A stretch of DNA of 64,000 nt, from the IMG/VR virus record IMGVR_UViG_3300045135_002615, positions 62,001 through 126,000 of that record; one strand, given 5' to 3'. The notes under the pieces were generated by a model. That model did no database searches. It was not told the DNA's origin and worked only from the letters and a program-made list of their open reading frames with translations. Of this stretch, positions 1 to 62,625 are shown one piece after another; within the stretch, counting starts at the first letter, position 1, and every line of letters begins with the position of its first letter. Made by a program: the position numbers and the translations under genes.

Positions 1-58
1 ACCCAAGTCCAAAGTTAAGGGCGGTAGTTGAGGGGGGTGAAATCTTAGATTTAATCAT
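1..58 (-). CDS. 5' end of a gene running off the window (MIKSKISPPSTTALNFGLG...), probably the next tail gene
   Basis: GGAGGA SD before ATG at 58; late-motif copy TTA-GTTGT-TCTAT at 96-108; frame open to the window edge. Confidence 0.6.
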   Translation of the reverse strand, partial: MIKSKISPPSTTALNFGLG

Positions 59-127
59 GCTATCCTCCATGCTCTTGGGGCACAGAGGTTAGCTGATAGA
101 ACAACTAAAAAAACGACCCTCTGTACC

Positions 128-850
128 TTACGCTTGGAACGTAAGAGTGTAAGTGATGGTCAGTGTACCATCATCAGTCTTCGTGATGGTGTTCGTAAGG
201 TGACGGCGGGCAAAGAGCCTCATGTTCGTGCTCGTAGCTGGCTGAGGACCCCCTGTAAAGCAGTCCGCATCTGCGTTGTCTCCCGCAGTCCAAATACCGA
301 TCTCTGCGATACCATCAGCGAGGTTTCCCTCAGTAGTGTCAAACTCAGCGGTGAACTGAATCTTGTTGGGCTCAGGGAAAGTGACTGAGTTGATCACTTT
401 GCAATAGATGGGGGTGACGCTCACAGGGTTGAAGTTACCATCAACCATGGTAGTGAGCTGAGATGAGTTCGCCACATCGGTGTTCTGAGAAGCATTGACA
501 GGAGATACGGTATTTGTCCCTAGTCCGTCATTGAGGTTGCTGCCGACAGCAATGAAAGAGATGCGGTTACGACCAAAGACATCAAGGGCATTACCCGTAG
601 CCATGTCAGGACCGATGTAGTCAGGTCCATTAGGGTATGCCGTACCATCAGCCGCCATGCCGAGCTGAGCCGCACGATCAGGGGCGGCGAGCGGGGTAAT
701 CCCGTCACTTGCGTAAATACGAGAGATGATCTGATCCATCAAGATGTTGTTGGACATCTTGACAACGGTGTTGGGACCCTCTGACTCTTGGATCACGTTG
801 CCCTGTGCATCCTTGAGGACAGCATGGACGTAGCCTTTGATATTGAACAT
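128..850 (-). CDS. Tail-collar/fibre-attachment protein (gpH N-terminal/DUF3751-like), 240 aa
   Basis: Motifs FIAVG, FTAEF..TEGN...IAEIGIW and LFARR....ITKT....LTITYTLTF; start moved to 850 (AAGGAG SD, late motif at 885-897). Confidence 0.7.
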   Translation of the reverse strand: MFNIKGYVHAVLKDAQGNVIQESEGPNTVVKMSNNILMDQIISRIYASDGITPLAAPDRAAQLGMAADGTAYPNGPDYIGPDMATGNALDVFGRNRISFIAVGSNLNDGLGTNTVSPVNASQNTDVANSSQLTTMVDGNFNPVSVTPIYCKVINSVTFPEPNKIQFTAEFDTTEGNLADGIAEIGIWTAGDNADADCFTGGPQPATSTNMRLFARRHLTNTITKTDDGTLTITYTLTFQA

Positions 851-884
851 AGTAGAACTCCTTGTGTGTCTATGAAGACACTCC

Positions 885-897
885 ATAAAAGATTTAT
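885..897 (-). promoter_or_regulatory. Late-promoter motif ATA-AATCT-TTTAT
   Basis: 35 nt upstream of ATG 850. Confidence 0.65.
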
Positions 898-3800
898 TAA
901 GCCGCACCACCATCGGTCTCCCAAATGATGAACCCGTCACGCCTCATTGTGAAGAAGTAATTCCATTGGAATTTATTGCCGTCAGTGTTCTGTATGAGCT
1001 CCATGTAGGGGAGAACACTTGAGGCGTTGTACACGGTAGTCGCACTCGATCCTCCATCATCTGCCCTCACCTCAAAGTACACCTCTACATCAGTAGCGTC
1101 ACCTTGAACCTCTAGTTGAAGCTGATGTCTCGTACCTAGTTGGAGCAACCAACTCGCCTGTGCTTCATTATCGGGGTTGAGCTTAGTTCCACCAGGGAAC
1201 TGCACATACCCGCCATCAACATAGACATAGGTGTAGTTTGCATCATGGAGATCAGGCTCAAGCCACCCTGTGAAGTCGGTAGACCCATCCGTTCCATTAG
1301 GAGATAGGACTGAAGAGTTATCAGGGGCTGGGCGGAGTCTCATCAAATCCGCATCATCACCCGCATCTGTGTATGTGTACTTGATGTACGCATACAGACG
1401 CACGGTCTCCGTCTTGTTGAAGTCAAAGTGTTGTTCACCATTAAAGGCAAACTTCACCGACTTGGTTAACGATTCAGGTGTGATCGTGTGGAGGTGATAG
1501 AGAGGTAGTGTATCAGCAGGTCCAGGGAATAGCTCCACATAGCTCTCACCCTTCAAGTACTGATAGGGTGACTCATTACTACCTCCGATCTTGAACGCAA
1601 GCTCCATGTCAGGGGGGCTCGTGTCATCAGATTCTGTAGAAGCATAGAGTTGATAGTCTCTGTCCCAGACAAGAGGTCCAATCTTAAAGAACGCATCATT
1701 ATTAGGGTTGTTGTACCCCGCAGTCAGCGTGGGGTGGACGGACAAGTCATTAGAGTCTCCTGTGATGACCTCTACAGGGACAGCACCTTGACTATCGGGC
1801 ATTAAAGTGGTGATGGCGGGATAGTTGAGTGTATTCAGTTGACCCTCATAGATACTGAACAGCTCTTCATCATTCACCGAGTTGGAGTTGTACCTCACCC
1901 CAATGTAGATATAAGGGTCTATGAGCACCTCAGTCTCGGTAGATGTGTCTGTTTGAGTAGGTAGTGAGTCCTCCATAACTAACGTCAAAGAGGTGGTTGT
2001 CTCATCTGTAGGTGATGGGACATTGAATTCACCTTGGCTCAAAAAGACCATCGAAGTAGTGACCTCGTCATCAATGACGTTGAGGGTATCCTCTTGTACG
2101 CTCTCAGCTACAACATCTCCAGCTAAGTGAGCATCAAGGATCAGAGGTAAGGTGTCTTCTAGGTTGATTGGGTCATACGAGTAAGTGTATGCCACCTCGT
2201 CAGTCATATTTAAGACATCATCAGAGGGGGTAAGGGTGAGGTTATATGTAGACTCATCTGTTACTTGAGCAAGGAACTCAGTTGCACTTGAAGGTGCTAG
2301 TAAGAGAGATGTGCTGTGATCATCAGACAGATTGTCAACCAAGTCTTCAGACGCAAGGCTCATAGTGAAAGAAGCATCGTCAATGACGAGTGCGGATGAG
2401 GACTCTTGTGTGCTGATTATGTCTAGAGTCGTAGTGTGTGTATCAACTACAGGCTCTATAGTGGAGCTCACTCTATAGGTGGAGATATAAGCGGTGTGTG
2501 TGTCAGTTGTCTGAGAGAGCATGTCAGTCTGTATAGAGTCATTCAAGTATGACCCAACTGAAAGCTCTTCTTTGATGGTGGGTATTAAGTCTTCAAAGTT
2601 CTGGGGTGTGTACTCATAGGTGTGTGTCTCTAGGGCGATCACTACAGGGACAAGATCATTAAAGGTATTCGCAGAGGCAAGTACTTGCTCCTCTTGTGTG
2701 AGAGGGAGTGTGTCCCCAACACTGAGAGACTGAGCTATGGACACTTGATCTGAGATCAATCCTGTTTGAGACTCAGAATATGATGACCATAGAGCTTGTG
2801 AGCTAGAACCAATCAATGGGATGATGTCATCTATTTGTGCAGACATCCTCAATGAGTATTCAAGATCATCTTCAACGGTAGCGGCGGGCTCGCTGATATT
2901 CGAGGGGAGGAGTAAGAGAGAGGCATCACTAACTGAGCCGACTAGCGGTACTTCATCCGTATAAGTTCTGTTGCTTGAATAGCTATGCTCATCAGTGATC
3001 GGGGCATTTGAGTCTTCTAGCTGTGCTTCCCATGGTGCGATAAAGGGCAAGGCATCGGGAGCGAAGTTGAGAGCCTTAACGCCATAGAGAGGTTCACTAG
3101 GGATGTACGCCCCTACTTGTATAGTGACTACAGCACCAACATCCTCTTCATCTTTAATGGCGGTGGGGTTGGGGTCTGTGATCTGTTCAAAGGTGACTAC
3201 TTCACCTGGGTTGGTTGCGAACGTGACGGCATATAAGAGGTTACCATCTCCACCGAACTCCTCATCTAATCTATATGTCTCTGCGGAGGTGTCCCATGAG
3301 GTATTCAATACATAAGGTGCGTTAGTCCCGCTTGAGAAGAAGTACCATGAGTCCGCCCCGCCTCCATCTTCCTCCATCGTGACTTCAATGTAGTAGGTCT
3401 GATAAGGGATGTGGTTAAAGGAAGCTGTGACTTCCGCTTCGTAGTTATTAGAGAAGTCCCCGTTGGAGTAGTTGTAAGCAAAACCCCCGCCCCCTCCTTC
3501 ATCTTGCAGCTTGTACGCTATAGGAGCCCCATTAGGAGGTACAATCTCTTGGAGTGCGGTAAAGCCATCTCCATTAGCTACGGGTGTAAGTGTTTGATAG
3601 TATTTAACTCCATCAACCCCTACCCTATAGATTGAGAAGTAGTACCCGTCACCACCTAGATCGTTTAAGAACGTGTAGTTGAAGAACAGGTGGGTGGGGA
3701 TCGTGTTGAAGGTCGTAGTCTCAAGAGCTGAAAGTGGACCTAAGAGGTATAGTGTGGGGTCTTGATAGAGTAGGGTGTCCTCTTGGGGCTTATTGAGATC

Positions 3801-6191
3801 ATGCAAAAAGCCAAGATTAGACCCTGAGATAGAGAGGCTAGAGAAGGAGTCCTCAAAGAATGAGAGTTCGCCTCTTACACCTGTAGAGGAGAGTTGTCTC
3901 TTGGCATAGATACGTCTATCAGCATCCTCACCATTGACATCAAGTCCAAGCGGGTTTTCGATGAGTTCTTCAGGGGTTGACTCAGATATGTTGGGTAAGA
4001 CATCAACATCAGTATATTGTAAAAAAGCCTGACCTTCTGCAAGAGTCTCTCCTTTGAACCATGACCCTTCGTAGGTAAGTGGGGTTGTTGAGAGTGCAGT
4101 AATGGTGAGGGTGGTGTGTCCACTCAAGTCTTTAACAAGAACACCTTGTTCTTGGATTGAGAAGGTGTAAGAGTTCCCTTGGTCGTCTACGATTGATGAG
4201 ATGTAGGAGGGGAAGAATCCAAGCTCAGTGTAAAGGATAAGAGAGTAGCTGGTTGATACGATAGCGACCGCAGGTCCTGAGACATTTGAAGGGTCGATGT
4301 CTTGACCAAGTGAAGCATTATTAAGGGTGAACCCTGAGTTGAGAACTTGGTTCTTTGTATGGATGATGTCCGAGGAGCTCACCGAGTAGGTTGATCTCTT
4401 CTCCTCTGTTGAATAGGGGCTTACGGGCGTAGCTGTATTCAACACATATGACATGGGGTTGGTGAGAACAGCTAGATTGTTATTGGGCTCACCTCTGCCA
4501 CTGAGACTGACAGATCTTGTGGGTCTTGAAGCGTTAAGAGTGAACTGCGTATCATTCAGTTCACTCAAGACCTTGATCTCTGATTTGGTCACCGGGTAAG
4601 TCAGGCTGACAACATCTCCGACTTGAAAGGCAACGCCATCAGAACTAAGTGTCCCTTGATCTGCATCATAGAATATATCACCTATATTGAGTGGTGTCCC
4701 CGCACGAGTGACTTCGACATTTAAGTCTGACCCCACGATAGGGAGTAAGCGATAAGACTTACGAATGAGGTCTGTGAAGTAAGAAGGGAGCTGTATATCG
4801 CCAGCTGTTTCATTAACAAAGGTGAGTGGCTCTCTTGTGAAGTCCTCACTAACTCTCCATGGGGAGCTTTGTCTAGTAAATAATACGATCCCTTGTTGAG
4901 CCACCTTAGAGTCAACTCGTACTACTTGAGCCGCGAGTCTAGTAGTCCCACCCAATAGAGTAGGGAAGTAGACTTTGCTGTCCGTGCTTAATAATAGTGG
5001 CTCACCATCGCCCACATAAGTCTGTGTTGGTTCTACAGAGAGGATGCCATTCGTCAAGGTGAAGTCTGAGCTAAAAGTAGTTTCCCCCACAGAGCGTATG
5101 AAGGTGAAGGATTCACCCGCTTGTGACACATCAGGAGGTAATGACTCATTAACGCTAATGACTCTAAGCCTCTGTGTATAGTACACCCCATCTTCTACCC
5201 ATCGTGCGATGAGCTCATCAGTCGTGTTGAGATTAGTGCGGAACAGCCTGACCTCATTACCATTCACATACCCGTAGAAGGTGTCCTCCCACACCCCCAC
5301 TCTTGCTTTCCTCATGTCTTCTTGGTAGAGACTGCCAAGACCTAATGAGATAGAGTCGAGTCCATCTATAGAGTCGGTCTCATTAGGTGCGATCCGATCA
5401 ACTTCTTGAAGGATCGAAGAGACAGAGCCCGTCTTAATATGGGCAGGCTTGATGACTTCAAAGACCTGTCTCAAGTTGTGTTGCAATCTCAAGATGTCTT
5501 GGGGCAAACCAAAGTAGACTTCGTGTGTGTGACTCACCCCTTCAGAGTTGGTGTGTGGTTGAACAACACCATCAATAATCTCATGTGTGTGGAGGTCATC
5601 ACCCCACCTGTAGTCTAGTGGTTTTAGTGTAGAACCTAGACCTGTAGCGGGGGCAAATGCGTAGTGTTTATGTTCGGGGATCACACCATCGGTATTGAAC
5701 TCAGTCGTAGCGAGAATAGAAGTCCTGATCTGAGCGATGTACCCGTTCACTTCAGATGTGACGTTAGAGTTGGTAATGCCATTAAGGGTCTGATCTATTG
5801 ATGTCTTAGTAGCACCCTCAAGTAGTCCCGCGTATACGCTTAAGAGCAACTCTAAGAGCTCACCTGTTTGGGTTGTTTGGGGAGCTGTACTCTCATCTAA
5901 AAAAAGAACGTAGAGTAGACGTGTAGACAGAAATTCCGCACGGAGCTGGCTGAGCTCCATATCATCAATATTATCTACGGAATCAACGAGGATACTTGAG
6001 AGGAGGCGAGCCACCCCTTCCATTAAAATCCTGTGGTTAGACCCATAGGCTTGGGTGAGATAGTTAGAGGCGGTGCCACTAGCCATTGTGGTGACGATCT
6101 GCTCGGTTAGGATGTCTTCTAAGAGCCTCCTCGAAGATGACCTAGTGTCCGTACCTTCTCTATTGAGTCTAGGGTCGTAGTCAAAGATCAT
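897..6191 (-). CDS. Large baseplate wedge/tail protein (P2 gpI-like N-terminus), acidic, with degenerate internal repeats
   Basis: LRQVFEVIKPAHI (KPAH motif typical of gpI-like wedge proteins); HxH cluster; coupled to the J-like gene; lies between J-like and collar genes. Confidence 0.65.
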   Translation of the reverse strand: MIFDYDPRLNREGTDTRSSSRRLLEDILTEQIVTTMASGTASNYLTQAYGSNHRILMEGVARLLSSILVDSVDNIDDMELSQLRAEFLSTRLLYVLFLDESTAPQTTQTGELLELLLSVYAGLLEGATKTSIDQTLNGITNSNVTSEVNGYIAQIRTSILATTEFNTDGVIPEHKHYAFAPATGLGSTLKPLDYRWGDDLHTHEIIDGVVQPHTNSEGVSHTHEVYFGLPQDILRLQHNLRQVFEVIKPAHIKTGSVSSILQEVDRIAPNETDSIDGLDSISLGLGSLYQEDMRKARVGVWEDTFYGYVNGNEVRLFRTNLNTTDELIARWVEDGVYYTQRLRVISVNESLPPDVSQAGESFTFIRSVGETTFSSDFTLTNGILSVEPTQTYVGDGEPLLLSTDSKVYFPTLLGGTTRLAAQVVRVDSKVAQQGIVLFTRQSSPWRVSEDFTREPLTFVNETAGDIQLPSYFTDLIRKSYRLLPIVGSDLNVEVTRAGTPLNIGDIFYDADQGTLSSDGVAFQVGDVVSLTYPVTKSEIKVLSELNDTQFTLNASRPTRSVSLSGRGEPNNNLAVLTNPMSYVLNTATPVSPYSTEEKRSTYSVSSSDIIHTKNQVLNSGFTLNNASLGQDIDPSNVSGPAVAIVSTSYSLILYTELGFFPSYISSIVDDQGNSYTFSIQEQGVLVKDLSGHTTLTITALSTTPLTYEGSWFKGETLAEGQAFLQYTDVDVLPNISESTPEELIENPLGLDVNGEDADRRIYAKRQLSSTGVRGELSFFEDSFSSLSISGSNLGFLHDLNKPQEDTLLYQDPTLYLLGPLSALETTTFNTIPTHLFFNYTFLNDLGGDGYYFSIYRVGVDGVKYYQTLTPVANGDGFTALQEIVPPNGAPIAYKLQDEGGGGGFAYNYSNGDFSNNYEAEVTASFNHIPYQTYYIEVTMEEDGGGADSWYFFSSGTNAPYVLNTSWDTSAETYRLDEEFGGDGNLLYAVTFATNPGEVVTFEQITDPNPTAIKDEEDVGAVVTIQVGAYIPSEPLYGVKALNFAPDALPFIAPWEAQLEDSNAPITDEHSYSSNRTYTDEVPLVGSVSDASLLLLPSNISEPAATVEDDLEYSLRMSAQIDDIIPLIGSSSQALWSSYSESQTGLISDQVSIAQSLSVGDTLPLTQEEQVLASANTFNDLVPVVIALETHTYEYTPQNFEDLIPTIKEELSVGSYLNDSIQTDMLSQTTDTHTAYISTYRVSSTIEPVVDTHTTTLDIISTQESSSALVIDDASFTMSLASEDLVDNLSDDHSTSLLLAPSSATEFLAQVTDESTYNLTLTPSDDVLNMTDEVAYTYSYDPINLEDTLPLILDAHLAGDVVAESVQEDTLNVIDDEVTTSMVFLSQGEFNVPSPTDETTTSLTLVMEDSLPTQTDTSTETEVLIDPYIYIGVRYNSNSVNDEELFSIYEGQLNTLNYPAITTLMPDSQGAVPVEVITGDSNDLSVHPTLTAGYNNPNNDAFFKIGPLVWDRDYQLYASTESDDTSPPDMELAFKIGGSNESPYQYLKGESYVELFPGPADTLPLYHLHTITPESLTKSVKFAFNGEQHFDFNKTETVRLYAYIKYTYTDAGDDADLMRLRPAPDNSSVLSPNGTDGSTDFTGWLEPDLHDANYTYVYVDGGYVQFPGGTKLNPDNEAQASWLLQLGTRHQLQLEVQGDATDVEVYFEVRADDGGSSATTVYNASSVLPYMELIQNTDGNKFQWNYFFTMRRDGFIIWETDGGAA

Positions 6192-10552: not shown

Positions 10553-10565
10553 ATAAAGGGATTAT
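10553..10565 (-). promoter_or_regulatory. Late-promoter motif ATA-ATCCC-TTTAT
   Basis: 44 nt upstream of ATG 10509, head of the baseplate operon. Confidence 0.65.
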
Positions 10566-12330: not shown

Positions 12331-12343
12331 ATAAAGAAACTAT
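12331..12343 (-). promoter_or_regulatory. Late-promoter motif ATA-GTTTC-TTTAT
   Basis: 42 nt upstream of ATG 12289. Confidence 0.65.
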
Positions 12344-12352: not shown

Positions 12353-12381
12353 TTGACACGAGTTTACCATTAGTGTAAGGT
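12353..12381 (+). promoter_or_regulatory. Host sigma70-type promoter for the sigma-like gene
   Basis: TTGACA (12353-12358), 17 nt spacer, TAAGGT (12376-12381). Confidence 0.6.
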
Positions 12382-12451
12382 GACTTACGACCACGATCCG
12401 TCATAACGTGACATCATCCAGGTCGTATATAAACCCTTACGAGGAGTACCA

Positions 12452-13309
12452 ATGCTAAGACTAAAGAACCTTAAGGCGACTACCGTCATTGATGAGATGA
12501 ACCACCTCACCAAGATGGAGACCGCAAAGATTGATCTCCTAACAGAGATGAAGCGTGTGATGAAGTCCCCACGACCTTCTAGGCGGGCTGACCCCACCGC
12601 CGCGTGGAACGCCACACAGCGTTGGCTGTATGATGGCAAAGCGGAGAACTACGAGAAGCTCCGCAAACTCTGTCTCCGCCGTATTGAGGGTGACGAGTCA
12701 GCGGGTGATCTTGGTGACCAGCTCTATGAGGATTACTTCATGGATTGGATTGCTGACATCACCCGTAAAGACACACTTGACGAGAAGATCGAGAAGGGCG
12801 AGAAGATCAACTTCAACGCTCTCTATTGGTGGTATCGTCAGTTCGTCCAACGTGCCTCGATGAAGGCTGCCCAAGATGCACACAGCCGAGCACGAGGTGC
12901 TAAGACCCAAAGTGAACTGAGCCTCAACCGCCCTCACCTCCATGACCTTGACAAGATGGAGGGTACAGGTTTCGCTACTGCTAACGTAGTGTATAACCTA
13001 GATGCTGAAACAGGTGCTCAAATCGGTGAGCCTGACTACTACATTGAGGAGTACGAAAGTCCCGTGGAGCAAGAGCTCCACATGGAGAGTGTATACGCCC
13101 AAGTCAAGAACCTCCTCACCAATCGACATGGCGAGGAGGAGGGTGGCTCAAGGTACAAGCTCTTTGAGCAGATGATGGAAGGTAAGGGGGGCTTCCAAAA
13201 CAAAGACGAGTGGGCAGCCTCTTGGGGGGTCTCCCGCTCTGTACTCAACAAGCGTATTGAAGCGGTTGAGAAGCTCCTCCAACGCAACAAGAGCCTCTTT
13301 TACCCTTAA
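12452..13309 (+). CDS. Divergent sigma70-family (ECF-like) sigma factor
   Basis: Helical region-2-like segment (EDYFMDWI...ALYWWYRQFVQR); C-terminal HTH KDEWAASWGVSRSVLNKRIEAVEKLL; GAGGAG SD. Confidence 0.6.
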   Translation: MLRLKNLKATTVIDEMNHLTKMETAKIDLLTEMKRVMKSPRPSRRADPTAAWNATQRWLYDGKAENYEKLRKLCLRRIEGDESAGDLGDQLYEDYFMDWIADITRKDTLDEKIEKGEKINFNALYWWYRQFVQRASMKAAQDAHSRARGAKTQSELSLNRPHLHDLDKMEGTGFATANVVYNLDAETGAQIGEPDYYIEEYESPVEQELHMESVYAQVKNLLTNRHGEEEGGSRYKLFEQMMEGKGGFQNKDEWAASWGVSRSVLNKRIEAVEKLLQRNKSLFYP

Positions 13310-14524: not shown

Positions 14525-14583
14525 GTGTACTCCTTCTATGTCTGTACCATGTGTAAACAAGAAGATAAAAGGAGTACAACATT

Positions 14584-19662: not shown

Positions 19663-19728
19663 GAACATCCTCCTTTAGATTGGTTATGACTTGGGTACGA
19701 TAAAAGAACTATCAAAGGAGTGGACAAC

Positions 19729-20953: not shown

Positions 20954-20966
20954 ATAGTTACTTTAT
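20954..20966 (+). promoter_or_regulatory. Late-promoter motif ATA-GTTAC-TTTAT
   Basis: 41 nt upstream of ATG 21007, just after a terminator. Confidence 0.65.
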
Positions 20967-22907: not shown

Positions 22908-22920
22908 ATAGATCATTTAT
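22908..22920. promoter_or_regulatory. Bidirectional late-promoter motif ATAGATCATTTAT
   Basis: Matches the consensus on both strands; between divergent genes 22877(-) and 22962(+). Confidence 0.65.
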
Positions 22921-22961: not shown

Positions 22962-24422
22962 ATGGCAAGAACTGACTCCGAGAAAAGAGACATCTACAAG
23001 AAGTGGCATGAGCTGATCAACATGAGTGAAACGGCTCTTAAGTCATGGGCAGAAGATGATGACAGGCTTCTTGCGTCTATCAATAGGCAAGAGGCAAAGT
23101 CTGAAGGGGGTATCCAATCGGGCTATGATTCCTTCCATCGCATAAAAAGGCGTAAAAAAAAGCCTTTTAAGGAATGGTCGGACTCGGATTTCGATAATGC
23201 TAATCAAGAGATAGGCTTCAACTCACGGATGCTAGGAGGCACCCCTGGGAAACCTGTGTCCAATTCAGGGCGATCTAAATGGGAGATCAGTCTTAGGAAT
23301 TGGGGACACGATCCTTCGTTGAAGTCAAGCCCCGCACATAATAAATGGAAGTCATGGAAGAAGAAGCAAGAGGAAACCAACATGAAGAAGTCACACCAAG
23401 TCCGCGTCCTGAAGAGGGCGATTATAGCCACGAGAAACCGCCCTGACCTAGCCCCACAGAGGGAGGAGTACATCCGCCTTTTGAAAGCTCATAATAGCAG
23501 GGTAGCTTCGGGTGACCCTAATAAAGAGTTAGAGAAGCCAGCTAAGAAGCTTGGTTTGTCTAGGAAAGATATGTACGAGGCATGGCTTCCACTTTTAAAA
23601 AAAGTATCGGGTCTTATCAAGCCTGAGTATCAGGTTCAGATTTCCAAGTTCATTTCGAGTTATGGTCTTTTGGGATTCTTCAATGGGCTCTACAAGGACA
23701 CCATGAAGGGTACAATCAAGCCCTCAAATCCCGTTGAAAAATTCCTTGCCTCGATCTTCAAAGGCTTGAGTATCTCAAAGACCGCCGAGATGACCATCCG
23801 TGTCCTCCAAGCGGAGTCCTTGGATGATATTGCCGAGGTCGGTAGAGCACAAGGTCGGGATATGTTGGGAGAGTGGGGTCTAGGAGACGCTAAACTCAAA
23901 AAGCGTATGTATGAGAATAAAGTGGGACGTAACGTCACTTGGGAGGAGTTCGCTGAACAAGTCGAAGATAAAAGGTTGTACACCATGTTGGTGAAGTATC
24001 TAACCTATATTGAGGATTCTAAAATCTTTGGGGTTAAGCTCTTGTTCACCATTGTCAAAGGTGCAGGTGTTGCTTGGTTATTAGGAGGCACTCTCGCAGG
24101 GATTACTTTCGGCGTGGTTGCATTCCTTAAGTTCATTTTTGCTTTGGCGGTGTGCTTCGGTTGGCGTAATGCAGCTCAGTTTCTTCGTAAGACAGGGATT
24201 ATGCTCACCGCACTCGCCCCTTCAGTGCTCATAGACCTTGGGAGGGTCTTAGGACTCCCGTTTGATATATTCCATGGCATTGTAAACAAAGTGAGTCAAG
24301 CCACAGATGCCGTCGTTAACTTCTTCTCGAAGAAGGCGGTACAAGAAATCCGTATGCTACTTAGAGAGGACATGGACTTCCGCAGGGAGTTCTTGATCAC
24401 TCAAAAACGCAGACACATCTAA
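22962..24422 (+). CDS. DUF3140-like domain fused to a helical/membrane protein
   Basis: INMS..AL.SW ... SKWEISLRNWGHDP; hydrophobic C-terminal segments; possible internal start at 23382. Confidence 0.7.
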   Translation: MARTDSEKRDIYKKWHELINMSETALKSWAEDDDRLLASINRQEAKSEGGIQSGYDSFHRIKRRKKKPFKEWSDSDFDNANQEIGFNSRMLGGTPGKPVSNSGRSKWEISLRNWGHDPSLKSSPAHNKWKSWKKKQEETNMKKSHQVRVLKRAIIATRNRPDLAPQREEYIRLLKAHNSRVASGDPNKELEKPAKKLGLSRKDMYEAWLPLLKKVSGLIKPEYQVQISKFISSYGLLGFFNGLYKDTMKGTIKPSNPVEKFLASIFKGLSISKTAEMTIRVLQAESLDDIAEVGRAQGRDMLGEWGLGDAKLKKRMYENKVGRNVTWEEFAEQVEDKRLYTMLVKYLTYIEDSKIFGVKLLFTIVKGAGVAWLLGGTLAGITFGVVAFLKFIFALAVCFGWRNAAQFLRKTGIMLTALAPSVLIDLGRVLGLPFDIFHGIVNKVSQATDAVVNFFSKKAVQEIRMLLREDMDFRREFLITQKRRHI

Positions 24423-24440
24423 TAATCTTTTAATAAGAGC

Positions 24441-28103: not shown

Positions 28104-28116
28104 ATAAATCATCTAT
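28104..28116 (-). promoter_or_regulatory. Late-promoter motif ATA-GATGA-TTTAT
   Basis: 40 nt upstream of ATG 28064. Confidence 0.65.
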
Positions 28117-40392: not shown

Positions 40393-40405
40393 ATAGATAA
40401 AATAT
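40393..40405 (-). promoter_or_regulatory. Late-promoter motif ATA-TTTTA-TCTAT
   Basis: 46 nt upstream of ATG 40347. Confidence 0.55.
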
Positions 40406-40979: not shown

Positions 40980-41213
40980 ATGCTCTCACCTAACCCCATA
41001 GATGGTTCGTAAATAAAGTCTACCAAGTGCCCCCCCCCTACCCTCACTGACACTTAAATAGTTGTTGACACACCCACACACGAAGATGTGGTGGTATGTC
41101 GGTGTCTACAGGGTGACATACGCTTCGAGTATAAAAAGACTATTGAGAGTTAAACCGACACGAAAAATGAGAGCGTTGAGTTGAGTTGGGTTCTAAGGGT
41201 AGGTATTGGGTCA

Positions 41214-41226
41214 GTAGGTTATTTAT
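41214..41226 (+). promoter_or_regulatory. Late-promoter motif GTA-GGTTA-TTTAT
   Basis: 45 nt upstream of ATG 41271. Confidence 0.6.
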
Positions 41227-42954: not shown

Positions 42955-42997
42955 GAGTGAGTCCTTTCTTAGTTGAGTTGGTTAAGGTATAGATAAA

Positions 42998-43036
42998 TTA
43001 AAAAGGCGACCCGCTTCCTTGACTAGGAAGAGGTCT
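42998..43036 (-). terminator. Probable terminator of the leftward 43-47 kb operon
   Basis: GACC.CTTCCT...AGGAAG..GGTC stem then T-tract on the minus strand, right after the stop at 43040. Confidence 0.6.
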
Positions 43037-52989: not shown

Positions 52990-52990
52990 G

Positions 52991-53128: not shown

Positions 53129-53181
53129 TGTGACCCCGAATTTGGAACCATGTTTATAAAGAGGGTTGAAAGGACACACAC

Positions 53182-54321: not shown

Positions 54322-54326
54322 GTTCA

Positions 54327-54339
54327 ATAAAGCCTTTAT
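54327..54339 (+). promoter_or_regulatory. Late-promoter motif ATA-AAGCC-TTTAT
   Basis: 47 nt upstream of ATG 54386. Confidence 0.65.
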
Positions 54340-54385
54340 TAGTGTGTATGGAGCATGAAGTCCCGCATAGAGAGGATCATGTGAC

Positions 54386-55810: not shown

Positions 55811-55812
55811 GT

Positions 55813-56880
55813 TTATCTTTTCTTCTTGTTTGAGGGCTTCTTCTTGGTCGAGGGCTTCTTTGGAGTATTCTTTTTGAGCTCTTTAGGGATAGCTTTAACT
55901 ACGGGGTCTTGTGTTCCGAGTTGGGTTTCAGCTTGGACTACCGCACCATCTACGAGCATTTGTGGTCCAGAGAGCATCTTGTATAGCCCTTTGCCGATCA
56001 TATGCAAAAACTTAAGGACCATCTTAAGAGGTGTTTCCACGAAGAGCTTACCGGGTAGTCGTTGAGTTTTGAACACACCCCATGAGATAAGCATGAGGAC
56101 ATAGTAAATGACGACAGCAACACCTAAGAATTTCAGGGTTGTGAAAAAGGAGATATGACCTCCGAGCCAACCAAGAAGTGTCATGATTGCGGAACCTATA
56201 GCGTTAATAGCAGTGAACAAACCTCCCCACGCCAAACCTACCGCCTTAGCCATTCCAATATATGCCGCATTGGAAGTGATTGATGTGGGTAGTATGAAGT
56301 TAAAGAGCCACCCTGCTCCCACACCAATGTAATAAACAATTTGTGTGGCAATCCATCCGGACCACCCAAGTGCCGAAACCATATATGCCCATAGGATGTT
56401 AGAGGACTTCTCCATAGAGCCTGTCTTCATAAACTCAGGCATCACCCCTGTCTTATTGACCCACAGTGATTTATCATCGCGGACGTACCATAGTAGAACA
56501 ACGGTCATCGTTTCGGGGGCGACATCTACAATCTTCGCCATCTCTTCAATTTTCTTATTCTTGAAGGCTACTTGGAACGAACCTACGATGTTGCTCGCCT
56601 CTTCGGGTGTTTTTACTTTTGAGAGCCTATCACTCAACATCTTCTGTATAGGGTCGTCTCGATCAACCTTAGCTTTGGTCATTTGAGAGAGGCTCATTTT
56701 ATGAGAAGAGAAGAGGTCTTGGATGCCTTTGAGGGCGGTCCCCGAAATACCTTTTCTTATCTTTAGTGCTTCATTAACAACGACAGCCTTAGTGACCTTC
56801 TCCTTAAGATCATCAACTATGCCTGCTCGCTTTTGCATCTTAGCGAGATGTAGACTTGCGACACGTTTTGAGTTAGCCAT
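55813..56880 (-). CDS. Multi-TM protein with leader variant MANSKRVASLHLAKMQKRAG
   Basis: GAGGAG SD; long hydrophobic region after KTGS. Confidence 0.75.
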   Translation of the reverse strand: MANSKRVASLHLAKMQKRAGIVDDLKEKVTKAVVVNEALKIRKGISGTALKGIQDLFSSHKMSLSQMTKAKVDRDDPIQKMLSDRLSKVKTPEEASNIVGSFQVAFKNKKIEEMAKIVDVAPETMTVVLLWYVRDDKSLWVNKTGVMPEFMKTGSMEKSSNILWAYMVSALGWSGWIATQIVYYIGVGAGWLFNFILPTSITSNAAYIGMAKAVGLAWGGLFTAINAIGSAIMTLLGWLGGHISFFTTLKFLGVAVVIYYVLMLISWGVFKTQRLPGKLFVETPLKMVLKFLHMIGKGLYKMLSGPQMLVDGAVVQAETQLGTQDPVVKAIPKELKKNTPKKPSTKKKPSNKKKR

Positions 56881-56920: not shown

Positions 56921-56933
56921 ATAAACAATCTAT
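56921..56933. promoter_or_regulatory. Bidirectional late-promoter motif ATAAACAATCTAT
   Basis: Matches the consensus on both strands; 41 nt from ATG 56880(-) and 36 nt from ATG 56969(+). Confidence 0.65.
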
Positions 56934-56968: not shown

Positions 56969-57646
56969 ATGGAACATAGAATCGCATCATTAGAGAGAAG
57001 ACTTGGGGTCACACCCTCAAGAGGTGCAAGCCTTAATGTGAGACTTGCAAACCTTGAGGAGTTAGCCACTGATAAGGCATCTAATCAGATAGAGCGTATC
57101 GCTCAGAAGAAGTTGCCCACTGAGGCTAAGAGAGTGGCTCAAATCGTTTTGGGTAAAGAGATGGGCATTACAAGCTATGCGGGCTTCAAATCGAAGGCAG
57201 CACAGATTTACAAAGAGGTGCAGAAAGCTGAGACAAAGAAGATTGGGCAGAGGATCATCAGGGCACACCCGAACGATTTAAAGGCTCAGTTCCGTATGGC
57301 GATTGGTCTCAATCTCTCAGAGGGCAAGCAGGCGGGCTTTGGGAGCAACTTTGTCTTAGGGGTTACAGTTACAGCGGTGCTGTTGTATCTAGTAATGGTT
57401 GCCATTGCGGACACGATTACTGCCTTTGGTCTAATATGGCTTCTCCCTAATATTCTTGGAGAGATGTCACTCTTACTCCTTGCTGGAGGCTTGGTTTTTG
57501 GGGTGATGGGTTCCGTGTTCTCATGGCTCATCAACTTGAAAAAAAGCCGTCAAGCTTCGCTCAAGTTGATGGGTCAAGAAGTCGTGACGAGGAAGAAGTC
57601 TCTAGGTAAAGAGCTTTTAGAGACTTTATTCGATCTACTCTCATAA
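56969..57646 (+). CDS. Membrane protein, N-terminus paralogous to 54386..55810
   Basis: RIASLERRLG..SRGASL.VRLANLE; hydrophobic block between KQAG and RQAS. Confidence 0.75.
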   Translation: MEHRIASLERRLGVTPSRGASLNVRLANLEELATDKASNQIERIAQKKLPTEAKRVAQIVLGKEMGITSYAGFKSKAAQIYKEVQKAETKKIGQRIIRAHPNDLKAQFRMAIGLNLSEGKQAGFGSNFVLGVTVTAVLLYLVMVAIADTITAFGLIWLLPNILGEMSLLLLAGGLVFGVMGSVFSWLINLKKSRQASLKLMGQEVVTRKKSLGKELLETLFDLLS

Positions 57647-57663: not shown

Positions 57664-58020
57664 TTGAGTGTGTACACGAGCATCGTAAAAGGCAAAAGGG
57701 TATGGCTTGAAAGCACGATAGGTCTGTATGAAGGAGTTGATGAAAGAAGTCGATTTGACTTGATCTCAAAAGGGCTCTTAGAGGCCAACTGTGTGTTGGA
57801 GAATGAGCTCGAAGACCCTTTACCTCCTGTGATAAGGATGAACACATACAAGATAGGCGGTAAGCTCGTGTTCTTCTTGTATCTTGTAGAGATACAGGGG
57901 TCGTTTAAATGTTGTTTTAAGGTGGGTAAGGGTGACATAAAAGTTCAAGGCGTATATCGTCTTGAGGCAGATACGATCTTCAAAGACATAAGAGAAGAGT
58001 GGAAGTCCTCATTTTCATAG
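57664..58020 (+). CDS. Hypothetical protein
   Basis: ORF fills the gap; GTG start. Confidence 0.5.
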   Translation: MSVYTSIVKGKRVWLESTIGLYEGVDERSRFDLISKGLLEANCVLENELEDPLPPVIRMNTYKIGGKLVFFLYLVEIQGSFKCCFKVGKGDIKVQGVYRLEADTIFKDIREEWKSSFS

Positions 58021-58029
58021 GCTTTTTAT
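58017..58029 (+). promoter_or_regulatory. Late-promoter motif ATA-GGCTT-TTTAT
   Basis: 34 nt upstream of ATG 58063. Confidence 0.65.
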
Positions 58030-58062: not shown

Positions 58063-58401
58063 ATGCCAGGAGACACATCAAAAATGACCGAGCTTGGCTT
58101 CAAGCTCTTGTCAGGTCTTATCATTCCTGTGGGGATCTACATCATCAATATGAGCACCAATGTTAAGTTGCTTGAACAGAAGGTAGAGACACAGGAGACA
58201 AGGATACAAGAGCTCAAAGACCATTCAGAACGAATGGTCGAGAATCTTAAAGAGTACGAGGTTAAGATCAACGCCTTCTGGCGAGCATTAGACTCCAACA
58301 ACAAAGACATCCTCTTGATCAAAGACTCAGTCAAGCTACAGAGTGAGATGGTCAAAGATGTATACGAATACATCCTCAAGCAACAAGGACGTACCCCATG
58401 A
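58063..58401 (+). CDS. N-terminal TM plus coiled-coil protein
   Basis: LLSGLIIPVGIYII then heptads; AAAGGAGG SD; late motif at 58017-58029. Confidence 0.7.
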   Translation: MPGDTSKMTELGFKLLSGLIIPVGIYIINMSTNVKLLEQKVETQETRIQELKDHSERMVENLKEYEVKINAFWRALDSNNKDILLIKDSVKLQSEMVKDVYEYILKQQGRTP

Positions 58402-61539: not shown

Positions 61540-61563
61540 GACAACCCATAACAAGGAGGTCTT

Positions 61564-61767
61564 ATGAAGACTACCGATCCGATGGAACACGTCAAGGTAC
61601 ACCTAAACAACGAGACTCCCAAGAGCACATGGTCAGACTTCTCTTTAGAAGATGAAGTCTTTAAGGGTGTTACCTTAGTTGACTCTAAGGGCAACGTGCT
61701 TCGCTTTGAGGGTGACTACACCATGACTAAGAATAAGCAAGGTGGTCTAGACATCAAGGCTTGTTAG
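61564..61767 (+). CDS. Small hypothetical protein
   Basis: AAGGAGG SD. Confidence 0.65.
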   Translation: MKTTDPMEHVKVHLNNETPKSTWSDFSLEDEVFKGVTLVDSKGNVLRFEGDYTMTKNKQGGLDIKAC

Positions 61768-61812
61768 TTTGTTTATAGCTACAGTCCACCGCTAACTGAA
61801 AGGACTATAGCT

Positions 61813-62154
61813 ATGAAGAATCTACTTACTATTGTAATCTGCCTCTCACTTGTCGCTTGTGAAGAGGAGAAGACTGAGACCACACCCTGCGGTGGCGAAG
61901 CCGTTGCAGGAACACCCGTACCTGCCGTTGTTGGTGGCGAGATTGCAGGTGTGCCCATGACATCAGGCGTTGACGCAGGTGAGGAGCCTGTGGCAGAGGG
62001 CGAGCCTGTCGCGGGTACACCTATGGGCGGTGAGGATGTCGCGGGTGTTGAGGCTGACATGATGGCAGGTGAGCCTGTTGAAGCTGACATGGGTGCTGAA
62101 GGTGGTATGCCTGTTGAGGCGGACATGGAGATGATTGGTGGTGTCGAAGGTTAA
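61813..62154 (+). CDS. Lipoprotein with acidic G/A/E/P/M low-complexity repeats
   Basis: Signal MKNLLTIVICLS plus lipobox LVA-C; AGEPV/VEADM repeats. Confidence 0.75.
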   Translation: MKNLLTIVICLSLVACEEEKTETTPCGGEAVAGTPVPAVVGGEIAGVPMTSGVDAGEEPVAEGEPVAGTPMGGEDVAGVEADMMAGEPVEADMGAEGGMPVEADMEMIGGVEG

Positions 62155-62175
62155 TGGTTTTTCTATAATGGGAGT

Positions 62176-62625
62176 ATGACACACACAAGGAGTACTCCCA
62201 TTATGATTAACCGATACGCTAATTTCCCTTCAACAGGCATCGCCGTCTACCCTGGACAAGCAGATTTGAAGGGTATGTTGATCAGATTAAAGACAGACCA
62301 CATCCATCAGGTCTATCGAAGACTCGATATACCTGGTGGGGGATATGAAGAGAAGCTCGTGACACTCCATCTTAAGAGAGGTACTACCTTAAGGGTCTCC
62401 CAACTTAATATATATGGGTTCATCTTTGAGATAGAAGCCGCCAAATACGGTCATCTACATACGGCAGAGGGAGTTACTCGCTTCCGTATAAGCACAACCA
62501 TGCGAGATAAGATGGGGAGGGATGCGATTTGGGTTTGGACCCCCTTCAGCATTTTTTATGCTGACGTGAAGATTGACCAACGCTTCATCAAGATCTTAAA
62601 AGATCACCATTCACGCCTTCAGTGA
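62176..62625 (+). CDS. Hypothetical protein
   Basis: ORF with SD-like GGAG (start uncertain). Confidence 0.55.
   Translation: MTHTRSTPIMINRYANFPSTGIAVYPGQADLKGMLIRLKTDHIHQVYRRLDIPGGGYEEKLVTLHLKRGTTLRVSQLNIYGFIFEIEAAKYGHLHTAEGVTRFRISTTMRDKMGRDAIWVWTPFSIFYADVKIDQRFIKILKDHHSRLQ

What the first reader, a model, noticed from the sequence alone, without database searches (positions are those of the whole stretch)
58..62176. Quasi-palindromic late promoter (A/G/T)TA-N5-T(T/C)TAT at a fixed distance from starts, usable in both directions
Seen: copies at 96, 885, 10553, 12331, 14565, 20954, 22908, 28104, 40393, 41214, 42989, 54327, 56921, 58017 and 61764. Near-matches at 19700 (6-nt spacer), 24422, 47219 and 62154. 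Nearly all end 31-47 nt before an SD-supported ATG of a structural or leader-bearing gene (47219 and 62154 are exceptions). The 13-mer is nearly self-complementary, and single copies at 22908 and 56921 serve divergent gene pairs. Established: T4-like late promoters are a lone TATAAATA read by gp55. This bipartite, symmetric motif is different. Inference: it is read by a phage sigma factor or a dimeric activator.
Basis: partly seen in the sequence, partly recalled or inferred. Interest (0 to 1): 0.7.

Follow-up and report, generated by a model that had tools for sequence, protein, structure and literature searches.

The report
Late-gene promoter of marine jumbo phages
A 13-16-base DNA signal sits about 40 bases ahead of some 65 genes, mostly virion genes, in an uncultured 297-kb marine phage and its relatives; it is almost certainly their late-gene promoter, probably read by host RNA polymerase carrying one of the phage's own very divergent sigma factors.

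Summary
All 15 listed copies exist. The pattern occurs 32 times in the window against 9.2 expected. Genome-wide, 65 copies end 25-52 nt before a start codon, and it is the top de novo upstream signal (p=3e-32).

The element is strongly directional: 54 co-oriented, 6 anti-oriented. Only three copies genome-wide, two of them in the window, sit correctly for both genes of a divergent pair.

It is conserved in four related IMG/VR jumbo phages, and it stays with orthologous genes despite genome rearrangement (odds ratio 15, p=9e-10). It heads the operons of major capsid, protease, terminase, portal, sheath-like, baseplate and tail-fibre genes. Replication genes carry a different TATAA-type element.

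The 12452 protein has a sigma-factor fold (sigma2 plus sigma4) and belongs to a rare family of 27 homologues. The genome also encodes an ECF-like sigma and a tandem-sigma4 protein. No phage RNA polymerase was detected.

Best reading: a -35-less, -10-type late promoter, TTwR-TAGTTY-n-TTTAT-A(+1). The palindromic look is largely incidental.

Start sites could not be tested, because no RNA run was listed. Which factor reads the element is unresolved. I rate it a new variant of a known kind, of moderate interest.

The parts
96..108 (-). class B promoter copy (TTAGTTGTTCTAT)
   Evidence: PWM 13.9. Ends 37 nt before the start codon at window 58 of a 212-aa gene that runs off the window.
885..897 (-). 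class B promoter copy, serves gene 128-850
   Evidence: PWM 19.9, 34 nt to start. The orthologue in relative G1 also carries the motif.
10553..10565 (-). class B promoter copy heading the operon 9472-10509 / baseplate wedge 6191-9475 / 897-6191
   Evidence: PWM 18.7, 43 nt to start. 6191-9475 matches phrog_6 baseplate wedge, 3e-29. The G1 orthologue has the motif.
12331..12343 (-). class B promoter copy, serves gene 10562-12289, divergent from the sigma gene
   Evidence: PWM 18.9, 41 nt. A motif site lies just upstream of, and divergent from, the sigma gene in G002 and G003 as well.
12452..13309 (+). gene of a 285-aa divergent sigma-family protein ('sigma285'), candidate reader of the motif
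   Evidence: No Pfam, PHROG or PDB sequence hit. 27 homologues among 1.84 billion representatives. Model pLDDT 79.7. The top 50 Foldseek and VIA-align matches are all sigma factors, Z 7-8; residues 210-282 superpose on a sigma4 domain at rmsd 2.0 A. It has a YWWYRQ motif like sigma70 region 2.3/2.4.
12353..12432 (+). upstream region of the sigma285 gene: TTGACA-N17-TAAGGT (12353-12381) and a class A TATAA (12428-12432)
   Evidence: The TATAA lies 19 nt before the ATG and is conserved in the G3 orthologue.
14565..14577 (-). class B promoter copy, serves leader-bearing gene 13691-14524
   Evidence: PWM 14.8, 40 nt. It overlaps the reverse complement of the SD of gene 14584.
14527..14539 (+). doubtful copy before gene 14584-14958
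   Evidence: PWM 9.2, 44 nt. It is the reverse complement of the SD of 13691-14524. Relatives have only a TTTAAT variant here.
19700..19712 (-). class B promoter copy, serves leader-bearing gene 19282-19662
   Evidence: PWM 21.5, the best in the window; 37 nt; exact match with the 5-nt spacer.
20954..20966 (+). class B promoter copy, serves leader-bearing gene 21007-21891
   Evidence: PWM 16.9, 40 nt.
22908..22920 (.). single copy matching on both strands between divergent genes 22632-22877 (-) and 22962-24422 (+)
   Evidence: PWM 17.9 (+, 41 nt) and 11.1 (-, 30 nt).
24422..24434 (+). near-match (TTAAT end) before gene 24479-25879; function uncertain
   Evidence: PWM 12.4, 44 nt. A 12-pair hairpin at 24441-24471 lies between it and the start.
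28104..28116 (-). class B promoter copy, serves gene 27396-28064
   Evidence: PWM 17.1, 39 nt. It also matches on + (12.8), but with no + gene nearby.
40393..40405 (-). weak copy before the 2909-aa gene 31618-40347
   Evidence: PWM 9.7, 45 nt.
41131..41143 (-). strong orphan copy with no SD-ATG within 50 nt
   Evidence: PWM 20.4. The next called - strand gene start is 151 nt away, and only ORFs of 31 aa or less lie between.
41214..41226 (+). class B promoter copy, serves gene 41271-41687
   Evidence: PWM 16.0, 44 nt. The G1 orthologue has the motif.
42989..43001 (-). class B promoter copy, serves the leader-bearing pentapeptide-repeat gene 41698-42954
   Evidence: PWM 13.7, 34 nt. Pfam Pentapeptide 2e-114.
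54327..54339 (+). class B promoter copy, serves gene 54386-55810
   Evidence: PWM 14.3, 46 nt.
56921..56933 (.). single copy matching on both strands between divergent genes 55813-56880 (-) and 56969-57646 (+)
   Evidence: PWM 12.8 (+, 35 nt) and 13.9 (-, 40 nt).
58017..58029 (+). class B promoter copy, serves gene 58063-58401
   Evidence: PWM 17.5, 33 nt. The G1 orthologue has the motif.
61764..61776 (+). class B promoter copy, serves gene 61813-62154
   Evidence: PWM 16.9, 36 nt.
62154..62166 (+). near-match (ATG instead of ATA) before gene 62203-62625
   Evidence: PWM 12.5. It ends 36 nt before the SD-supported ATG at 62203.

Best explanation
The motif is the promoter of the late (virion and packaging) regulon of an uncultured marine jumbo phage clade.

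Shown:
- It is a directional, strongly over-represented element at a fixed distance before about 65 genes.
- It is conserved, together with its target genes, in four related phages.
- It heads the operons that contain every recognisable structural gene.

Inferred, favoured register: pooled over 170 sites the consensus is T-T-w-A-T-A-G-T-T-Y-n-T-T-T-A-T-a. I read this as TTwR (-16 to -13), then a -10-like hexamer TAGTTY (-12 to -7), then n-TTTAT (-6 to -1), with initiation at the following purine (mostly A). There is no -35 element. The outer ATA...TAT, which makes it look palindromic, would then be part of the -13/-11 positions and of the pre-start stretch. A copy whose inner bases fit both ways can fire both ways, with starts about 14 bp apart.

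Inferred, reader: host core RNA polymerase carrying a phage sigma factor. The 285-aa sigma-fold protein at 12452-13309 is the leading candidate.
For: Enrichment and position.

Directionality: 54 co-oriented against 6 anti-oriented.

Replication in independent genomes: in G1, 75 of 93 upstream hits end 25-52 nt before a start; in G3, 16 of 18; in G5, 14 of 18. Whole-record counts against the reversed-pattern control are 59/9, 37/6, 9/0 and 8/1.

Regulon conservation across rearranged genomes: odds ratio 15, p=9e-10 for G1; 21 and 45 for G3 and G5.

Need for a promoter: 26 of 82 directon heads carry it and 32 more carry the TATAA class. sigma70-type sites are under-represented, 14 against 24.1 +/- 5.0.

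Gene content: the nearest upstream element is class B for major capsid, protease, terminase, portal (a variant copy), sheath-like, baseplate wedge, tail fibre, tail and virion proteins. It is class B for only 1 of 15 replication or transcription genes. As scored the table is [[8,1],[1,14]], p=1e-4; the one structural 'class A' call is a TTTATAA overlap with a PWM 18.4 class B site.

Register: class A is TT-n-R-TATAA-N7-A, with the A at +12 in 58%, 42% and 51% of sites in three genome sets. Class B has TT, R and TA at the same offsets and A at the same +12 position (45%; purine 68%), anchored to the motif and not to the start codon.

Reader: sigma fold of the 12452 protein. Predicted contact with the E. 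coli beta' 200-350 region scored 0.43 against 0.02 for the best control, rated 'weak support' (58 of 80 solved complexes and 2 of 110 mismatched pairs reach the mark); runs agree in at least 50% of contacts and partner pLDDT is at least 61. The sigma285 family is present in all four motif-bearing relatives at E 1e-37 to 1e-80. No multisubunit or T7-like RNA polymerase was found.
Against: - No transcription start or timing data. No RNA run was listed, so both 'promoter' and 'late' rest on sequence logic.
- The -7 position is only T 54% / C 32%.
- An invariant TTTAT at -5 to -1 is unusual for sigma70-family promoters. It looks more like single-subunit polymerase promoters.
- sigma285 has a sigma4-like domain, yet there is no -35 information in the 40 nt upstream of the motif.
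- sigma285 has no Pfam hit. Structural Z scores of 7-8 lie in the range the tool warns can be common for helical folds, although every top match is a sigma factor.
- Distant sigma285-family and sigma208 homologues both occur in relatives that lack the motif, so the distribution among relatives does not single out one reader.
- The ribonucleotide reductase gene lies behind a class B gene.
- Further motif-anchored weak signals (T at +11, A at +16 after the proposed start) are unexplained and would also fit a start about 15 nt further downstream.
Confidence: 0.6

Rival explanations
1. The motif is the binding site of a phage activator with two helix-turn-helix units. The candidate is the 190-aa tandem-sigma4 protein at genome 127841-128413, or a dimer. 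It would bind the two ATA(R) half-sites one helical turn apart and recruit RNA polymerase to a separate, weakly conserved core promoter.
For: The half-sites ATAR / YTAT are centred 10 bp apart, the classical spacing for paired HTH readers (direct reading of the consensus). The genome encodes a protein with two sigma70_r4-like HTH domains (Pfam 25 bits, above the cut-off; a second weaker match) from a widespread viral family. Its gene sits next to a NusG-like gene and the clamp loader. An asymmetric tandem protein could explain a quasi-palindrome that is nevertheless directional.
Against: Inner positions are strongly asymmetric, and orientation relative to the gene is 54:6. No second conserved block that could be a core promoter occurs at a fixed offset. 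Only 27-52 nt (median about 40) remain before the start codon, and these must also hold the leader and the SD. Class B shares TTnR-TA with class A at the same offsets, which points to recognition by the initiating polymerase itself.
Confidence: 0.15
2. The motif is the promoter of an unrecognised phage-encoded RNA polymerase, single-subunit or otherwise non-canonical. That enzyme would read about 13-16 conserved bases ending at -1 and start at the next purine.
For: The conserved block runs right up to a T-then-purine step (A 45%, purine 68% at the next base), as in T7-type promoters (my own knowledge of those consensus sequences). More than half of the proteins tested have no recognisable family, including several of 1000-1900 aa.
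Against: No match to Pfam RNA_pol (PF00940) or to RNA_pol_Rpb2_6, though the PF00940 search had no positive control. phmmer with T7 RNA polymerase against six-frame ORFs of this genome and of G1 found nothing at E<=10. The phage encodes two sigma-like proteins, a tandem-sigma4 protein and a NusG-like protein, which only make sense with the host core enzyme.
Confidence: 0.12
3. The motif acts at the RNA level, as a processing site or a 5'-leader element, rather than as a promoter.
For: The distance to the start codon is fixed. A strong orphan copy at 41131 and the copy before the capsid operon have long leaders of 121-151 nt.
Against: 26 copies head directons, where the neighbouring gene is on the other strand, so no upstream transcript in that orientation is expected without a promoter there. 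Single copies serve both strands in divergent pairs. There is no conserved secondary-structure context.
Confidence: 0.03
4. It is a compositional or chance pattern, AT-rich intergenic DNA plus reverse complements of Shine-Dalgarno sequences.
For: A few copies (14527, 14565, and genome 247181/247214) contain CTCCTT, the reverse complement of the SD of a divergent neighbour.
Against: There are 32 copies against 9.2 expected. The dyad p-value is 3e-32. The distance distribution is sharp. The motif is conserved on orthologues in four genomes.
Confidence: 0.01

Closest known systems
T4-type late promoters (8-bp TATA box read by gp55, with gp33 and the gp45 sliding clamp)
   Same: A short phage-specific element in the -10 region with no -35 element. 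It drives virion genes in either polarity and is read by host core polymerase with a phage sigma-like subunit (PMC2988020; PMC7892883 abstract).
   Different: The sequence is different: TTwATAGTTYnTTTAT rather than the TATA box. It is longer and runs to -1. The candidate sigma has a sigma4-like domain, which gp55 lacks. Clamp dependence is unknown. A TATAA-type element exists in this phage too, but it sits on replication genes.
Extended -10 promoters of sigma70-family holoenzymes
   Same: Recognition is confined to the -10 region plus a few bases upstream. T(-12), A(-11) and a mostly T(-7) are present in the favoured register.
   Different: The upstream extension is TTwR, not TGn. Positions -10 to -8 are GTT. 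A near-invariant TTTAT fills the discriminator.
Sigma cascades of large virulent phages (e.g. Bacillus phage SPO1: host sigma A, then phage sigmas for middle and late genes)
   Same: Several phage sigma-like genes and at least two phage-specific promoter classes partition replication from virion genes (PMC13401047 abstract). The sigma genes have host-type -35 boxes.
   Different: SPO1 middle and late promoters have -35 and -10 boxes (my own knowledge). Here neither class has a -35 element. The pairing of sigmas with classes is not established.
Pseudo-symmetric bidirectional bacterial promoters
   Same: Near-symmetry of the -10 region lets one short element start divergent transcripts. Divergent starts 7-25 bp apart define the class (PMC10268837; PMC12825309 abstract). 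In the favoured register the two starts would be about 14 bp apart.
   Different: The usual sigma70 arrangement is 18 bp, with -7T and -11A reciprocally paired. Here the symmetric parts are -13/-11 and -3/-1. Only 3 of about 65 copies in this genome are used both ways.
T7-type single-subunit RNA polymerase promoters
   Same: A contiguous conserved block ends at -1 with an AT-rich stretch and is followed by a purine start.
   Different: No such polymerase gene was found. The block is shorter and degenerate in the middle.

Membership tests
T4-type late promoter / gp55-gp33-gp45 system | 8-bp TATA box (TATAAATA) about one helical turn upstream of the start | tested here: not met
   The consensus is TTwATAGTTYnTTTAT. 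TATAAATA occurs only 15 times in the genome, 9 of them intergenic.
T4-type late promoter / gp55-gp33-gp45 system | No -35 element | tested here: met
   Information content is below 0.1 bit at every position from -40 to -5 relative to the motif, over 170 sites.
T4-type late promoter / gp55-gp33-gp45 system | Reader is a sigma2-only protein without a sigma4 domain | tested here: not met
   Residues 210-282 of the 285-aa candidate superpose on sigma4 domains at rmsd 2.0 A. The 208-aa candidate resembles ECF sigmas with regions 2 and 4.
T4-type late promoter / gp55-gp33-gp45 system | Activation by the replication sliding clamp | not testable with these tools
   Only a clamp-loader gene next to the NusG-like and tandem-sigma4 genes was seen.
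sigma70-family -10-type promoter | T(-12) A(-11) ... T(-7) hexamer ending 7 nt before a purine start | tested here: inconclusive
   In the favoured register TA is invariant (required by the search pattern, but confirmed by the dyad search). -7 is T 54% / C 32%, and +1 is A 45% / purine 68%. Start sites are unmapped.
sigma70-family -10-type promoter | Transcripts start just downstream of the element | not testable with these tools
   No RNA run was listed for this phage.
sigma70 protein family (for the 12452 protein) | sigma2 and sigma4 domain folds | tested here: met
   The model has pLDDT 79.7. All top 50 Foldseek and VIA-align matches are sigma factors. The aligned range corresponds to E. 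coli sigma70 residues 383-609, Z 7-8.
sigma70 protein family (for the 12452 protein) | Sequence match to curated family models | tested here: not met
   No Pfam or PHROG hit, and no PDB sequence hit with the single sequence or the profile. Only a YWWYRQ motif resembling region 2.3/2.4 is seen by eye.
sigma70 protein family (for the 12452 protein) | Binds the beta' clamp helices of core polymerase | tested here: inconclusive
   The predicted complex with E. coli beta' 200-350 scored 0.43 against 0.02 for the best control, and the tool's verdict is 'weak support'. The mark is reached by 58 of 80 solved complexes and 2 of 110 mismatches. Runs agree in at least 50% of contacts and partner pLDDT is at least 61.
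Pseudo-symmetric bidirectional promoters | One element, divergent starts 7-25 bp apart | tested here: inconclusive
   Three single copies in this genome, three in G3 and one in G5 lie 25-52 nt from both divergent start codons. The spacing of starts (about 14 bp) is only inferred.
T7-type single-subunit polymerase promoter | Genome encodes a single-subunit RNA polymerase | tested here: not met
   PF00940 gave no match, but that search had no positive control. phmmer with T7 RNA polymerase against six-frame ORFs of G0 and G1 gave none.
sigma54 -24/-12 promoter | GG and GC dinucleotides 10 bp apart | tested here: not met
   The consensus has no conserved GG or GC. The weak Sigma54_activat match of gene 46015-47154 scores the same as AAA_5, so it looks like a generic AAA+ protein.
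Operator of a symmetric dimeric activator | Orientation-independent, symmetric half-sites, separate core promoter | tested here: not met
   Orientation bias is 54:6. Position 4 (mostly T) is not complementary to invariant T at position 8. There is no second conserved block.

The most novel reading that the evidence does not exclude
A previously undescribed, very rare sigma family (27 homologues among 1.84 billion representative proteins) directs host RNA polymerase to a 16-nt, -35-less promoter. The specificity of this promoter would lie partly in an invariant TTTAT discriminator directly before the start. Its built-in near-symmetry would let single copies fire divergent late operons. Together with an ECF-like sigma, a tandem-sigma4 protein and a NusG-like factor, this would be a new phage transcription programme in an uncultured marine jumbo-phage clade.
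Probability: 0.3. Interest if true: 0.65.

Novelty: new variant of a known kind. Interest (0 to 1): 0.5.

Why it matters
The phage clade has no cultured member. Its nearest GenBank record is an unannotated 485-kb metagenomic phage. More than half of the proteins tested match no known family.

A reliable late-promoter signature gives three things:
- a sequence-only way to split such genomes into virion and non-virion regulons, which flags about 65 mostly unknown genes per genome as late or virion candidates;
- a defined promoter-sigma pair to test in vitro;
- a natural example of how a sigma-type promoter can be specified by positions outside the canonical hexamer.

It does not overturn current ideas. 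Phage-specific -35-less late promoters and phage sigmas are well known.

Tried and rejected
- RNA evidence: two searches for sequencing runs (any kind, and RNA only) listed only DNA runs from seawater and estuary samples. Start sites could not be examined.
- Near-identical DNA in GenBank phages: none.
- Close relatives of the 12452 protein in IMG/VR by peptide patterns: none. By tblastn in GenBank phages: none.
- Sequence-level identification of the 12452 protein: Pfam, PHROGs and PDB (phmmer and profile) all empty. The borderline PDB hits, including the N4 virion polymerase at E 0.47, are chance.
- Phage RNA polymerase: Pfam Rpb2_6, Pfam T7-type and phmmer with T7 polymerase were all negative. 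The 3139- and 3113-aa proteins match tail fibre/tail families. The 2909-aa protein matched nothing.
- Annotation of 20 motif-bearing genes with PHROGs gave almost nothing. Function was therefore inferred from operon partners.
- Using the distribution among relatives to choose between the two sigmas failed. Distant homologues of both occur in relatives that lack the motif.
- Scanning for RCTTGAC as an early-promoter word was uninformative, because it is common in coding DNA.
- The register with TTTAT as the -10 element was considered. It is less favoured because the implied -7 position is unconserved and the implied start region (7-9 nt after the motif) is pyrimidine-rich.
- A -35-position reading was set aside because the remaining leader would have a median length of about 8-17 nt.
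- Literature searches found no description of this motif.

Full report
CONTEXT. The window is bases 62001-126000 of a 296,642-bp IMG/VR virus record with an estimated completeness of 95%. The DNA run that holds it almost completely is labelled a seawater metagenome. There is no near-identical GenBank phage. By DNA polymerase and terminase the nearest GenBank record is the unannotated metagenomic phage LR745208.1 (47.7% and 64.2% amino-acid identity). The next is Tunturiibacter phage Tunturi_5, at 28.5% terminase identity. I called 316 genes with a simple codon-usage and Shine-Dalgarno scorer. All distances below depend on those calls.

All 15 listed copies are there.
- In the whole genome, 75 co-oriented copies lie within 120 nt upstream of a start codon, and 65 of them end 25-52 nt before it.
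- 69 of 124 distinct sites lie in the 7.5% of the genome that is intergenic.
- A position weight matrix gives 103 sites at score 10 or more, against 22 on the reversed genome. 70 of the 103 are in the 25-52 nt slot.
- An unbiased enumeration of 4-mer/gap/4-mer dyads in the -75..-15 windows of all genes puts ATAG-N4-TTTA first (27 windows against 0.79 expected, p=3e-32). The next ranks are overlapping pieces of the same motif.

Corrections of detail:
- 19700 is an exact match with the normal spacer and is the best copy in the window.
- 62154 ends 36 nt before the SD-supported ATG at 62203, so it is not an exception.
- 47219 is not a copy; it belongs to the second promoter class.
- 14527 is weak and is the reverse complement of the neighbour's SD.
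The next called gene start on that strand is 151 nt away.

IS IT SYMMETRIC AND BIDIRECTIONAL? Only marginally.
- With no inner constraints, a .TA-N7-TA. shell is enriched in the 26-51-nt bins, whereas the N6 and N8 shells show little or no such peak. The inner columns are asymmetric.
- Copies pointing at the gene outnumber copies pointing away by 54 to 6. Most of the 6 are the promoters of a divergent neighbour.
- Eight sites in the genome match on both strands. Three of them (window 22908, window 56921, genome 186590) lie 30-44 nt from both starts of a divergent pair.
- The same arrangement recurs in relatives: three in G3, one in G5, none in G1.

IS IT CONSERVED? Yes.
- The DNA polymerase retrieved 17 IMG/VR loci. 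In those with 60-73% polymerase identity, the same motif (ATAGTTTnTTTAT) precedes SD-ATG starts by 26-49 nt. In the loci with 40-58% identity the PWM scan found almost none.
- Whole-record counts against the reversed-pattern control are 59/9 (G001, 376 kb), 37/6 (G002), 9/0 (G003) and 8/1 (G005). They are 1/2 for the 619-kb G004 and 2/1 for LR745208.1.
- After fetching G001, G003 and G005 in full and calling genes the same way, 75 of 93, 16 of 18 and 14 of 18 upstream hits fall in the 25-52 nt slot.
- Gene order differs greatly between the genomes, yet reciprocal-best-hit orthologues keep the motif. For G0/G1 the table is [[135,11],[16,20]], odds ratio 15, p=9e-10. For G3 the odds ratio is 21 and for G5 it is 45, each with p about 1e-4.
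This is the strongest argument that the element is functional and belongs to a regulon.

WHICH GENES? Most proteins match nothing, but the recognisable ones divide cleanly.

Genes whose nearest upstream co-directional element is class B:
- major head protein (phrog_2522, 1e-51)
- head maturation protease
- large terminase
- portal (a variant copy, PWM 10.5)
- a 1606-aa protein with a weak sheath domain
- baseplate wedge (window 6191-9475)
- the 3139-aa tail fibre
- the 3113-aa tail protein
- a virion structural protein

Genes that instead have a TATAA element 19-55 nt upstream, or none:
- DNA polymerase
- two SNF2 helicases
- clamp loader
- RecA
- an SbcC-like ATPase
- RecD-like and DnaB-like helicases
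- a methylase
- thymidine kinase
- the sigma genes

The only exception is ribonucleotide reductase, which lies behind a class B gene. As scored automatically the table is [[8,1],[1,14]], p=1e-4. The one structural 'miss' is an overlap artefact (TTTATAA). Of 82 directon heads, 26 carry class B and 32 carry class A only. sigma70-type -35/-10 sites are fewer than in shuffles, 14 against 24.1. 'Late' is therefore an inference from gene content, not from timing.

HOW IS IT READ? Pooling 170 sites from four genomes gives T-T-w-A-T-A-G-T-T-Y-n-T-T-T-A-T-a, with no information in the 40 nt upstream.
- The second class is TT-n-R-TATAA. It has an A seven bases after the hexamer in 58%, 42% and 51% of sites in three genome sets, the normal -10-to-start geometry.
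- Class B has T, T, a purine and TA at exactly the same offsets. It has an A (45%; purine 68%) at the same +12 position, directly after TTTAT. That A is anchored to the motif whatever the distance to the start codon.
- I therefore favour the register TTwR (-16..-13), TAGTTY (-12..-7), nTTTAT (-6..-1), A(+1).
- In the alternative register, with TTTAT as the -10 element, the -7 position is unconserved and the start region is pyrimidine-rich.
- If the motif sat at the -35 position, the leaders would have a median of only about 8-17 nt.
- Unexplained: weak motif-anchored signals further downstream (pyrimidines at +4..+9, T at +11, A at +16 in the favoured numbering).

WHO READS IT?
- No multisubunit or T7-like polymerase was found. 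The PF00940 search lacked a positive control.
- The 12452 protein has no family hit and only 27 homologues in 1.84 billion representatives.
- An alignment-based model (pLDDT 79.7) matches sigma factors in all of the top 50 Foldseek and VIA-align rows (Z 7-8, covering sigma70 residues 383-609). Its C-terminal 70 residues superpose on a sigma4 domain at 2.0 A.
- The alignment shows a YWWYRQ segment like sigma70 region 2.3/2.4, followed by a conserved GARTQAE-type segment.
- A predicted complex with the E. coli beta' 200-350 segment scored 0.43 against 0.02 for the best control, which the tool rates as weak support.
- The family is present at E 1e-37 to 1e-80 in all four motif-bearing relatives. 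In G002 and G003 a motif site again lies just upstream of, and divergent from, the sigma gene.
- Distant family members also occur in the relatives that lack the motif. So do homologues of a second, ECF-like sigma of 208 aa.
- A third candidate is a 190-aa protein with two sigma4-type HTH domains. Its gene lies beside a NusG-like gene and the clamp loader.
- Both sigma genes have an intergenic TTGACA box with a TAnnnT 16-17 nt downstream. The sigma285 gene also has a class A TATAA 19 nt before its ATG, conserved in G3.
- This fits a cascade of host sigma, then class A, then sigma285, then class B. That ordering is inference only.

COMPARISON WITH WHAT IS KNOWN. The closest analogue is the T4 late promoter, an 8-bp TATA box with no -35 element, read by gp55 with gp33 and the sliding clamp (PMC2988020; PMC7892883). 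The logic is shared. The sequence, the length, the conserved pre-start stretch and the presence of a sigma4-like domain in the candidate reader are not. The use of one copy in two directions resembles the pseudo-symmetric bidirectional promoters described for bacteria (PMC10268837; PMC12825309), but with different symmetric positions and an inferred 14-bp rather than 18-bp start spacing. I found no paper describing this motif.

VERDICT. The promoter interpretation is well supported by sequence evidence. I classify it as a new variant of a known kind, of moderate interest.

Noticed in passing
window 13691-14524(-), 19282-19662(-), 21007-21891(+), 41698-42954(-); also L012:5004-5459(+), L021:5300-5815(+), L021:5875-6243(+): Seven otherwise unrelated proteins begin with the same 23-residue leader, MRHLTASQKIAQLExRIAxLEKxA. 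Five of them have the class B promoter. It may be a targeting or scaffold-binding tag cleaved by the head protease. No such leader was seen in relative G1.
   Followed up: partly
genome-wide; in the window e.g. 12428-12432 (before the sigma gene) and about 47225-47310: There is a second upstream motif class, TT-n-R-TATAA, with an A seven bases after the hexamer and no -35. It lies 15-60 nt before replication, recombination and transcription genes and is conserved in the relatives.
   Followed up: partly
L016:2325-3413 (genome 127325-128413), next to clamp loader L016:1093-2307: A 170-aa protein with weak NusG / antiterminator matches is followed by a 190-aa protein with two sigma70 region-4 HTH domains. 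The latter belongs to a widespread viral family.
   Followed up: partly
L022:8403-9029(-) (genome 241403-242029): This is a second phage sigma: 208 aa, ECF-like (Sigma70_r2 19 bits; phrog_1740 2e-6). A near-consensus TTGACA-N16-TATAGT lies about 90 nt upstream. Its gene overlaps a thymidine kinase gene.
   Followed up: partly
window 41131-41143(-): One of the best motif copies (PWM 20.4) has no SD-ATG within 50 nt. The next called gene start on that strand is 151 nt away, and the interval holds a G-run. It could be a long regulated leader or a small RNA. The copy before the capsid operon likewise has a 121-nt leader.
   Followed up: partly
window 41698-42954(-); also L016:8255-9568(-), L019:11873-13492(+), L022:14230-15930(+): There are several pentapeptide-repeat proteins (Pfam Pentapeptide 2e-114 for the window copy). 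One carries the N-terminal leader, and three have the class B promoter. They may be DNA-mimic-type virion proteins.
   Followed up: no
L014:5897-8797(+), L019:13440-16031(+), L021:9336-11252(+): Intein or LAGLIDADG insertions occur in an SNF2 helicase, in the ribonucleotide reductase large subunit and in a DNA methylase.
   Followed up: no
window 47233-47258: A G7...C7 hairpin lies in the intergenic region between divergent genes 46015-47154(-) and 47330-49018(+), flanked by TATAA elements on both strands. C- or G-runs also precede many other TATAA elements.
   Followed up: no
window 36000-40000, 46000-54000 and 54000-56000: Composition is odd in three places. GC skew is -0.34 to -0.58 over the 5' part of the 2909-aa gene (a G/V/E/L-rich protein). 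A block at 46-54 kb has 52-55% GC against 45-50% elsewhere. GC skew is +0.42 over gene 54386-55810, whose product has hydrophobic segments and a KPKPKKKRRRRR run.
   Followed up: partly
L017:4669-4724 and L017:6644-6699 (genome 147669 and 149644): The promoter copy and at least the first 30 nt of the leader are identical before two members of a tandem trio of paralogous genes of about 320 aa.
   Followed up: no
window 24441-24471: A 12-pair hairpin without a T-run lies between the stop of gene 22962-24422 and the start of 24479-25879, just after the near-match at 24422.
   Followed up: no
window 1-64000: No tRNA or tmRNA genes were found in the window.
   Followed up: yes
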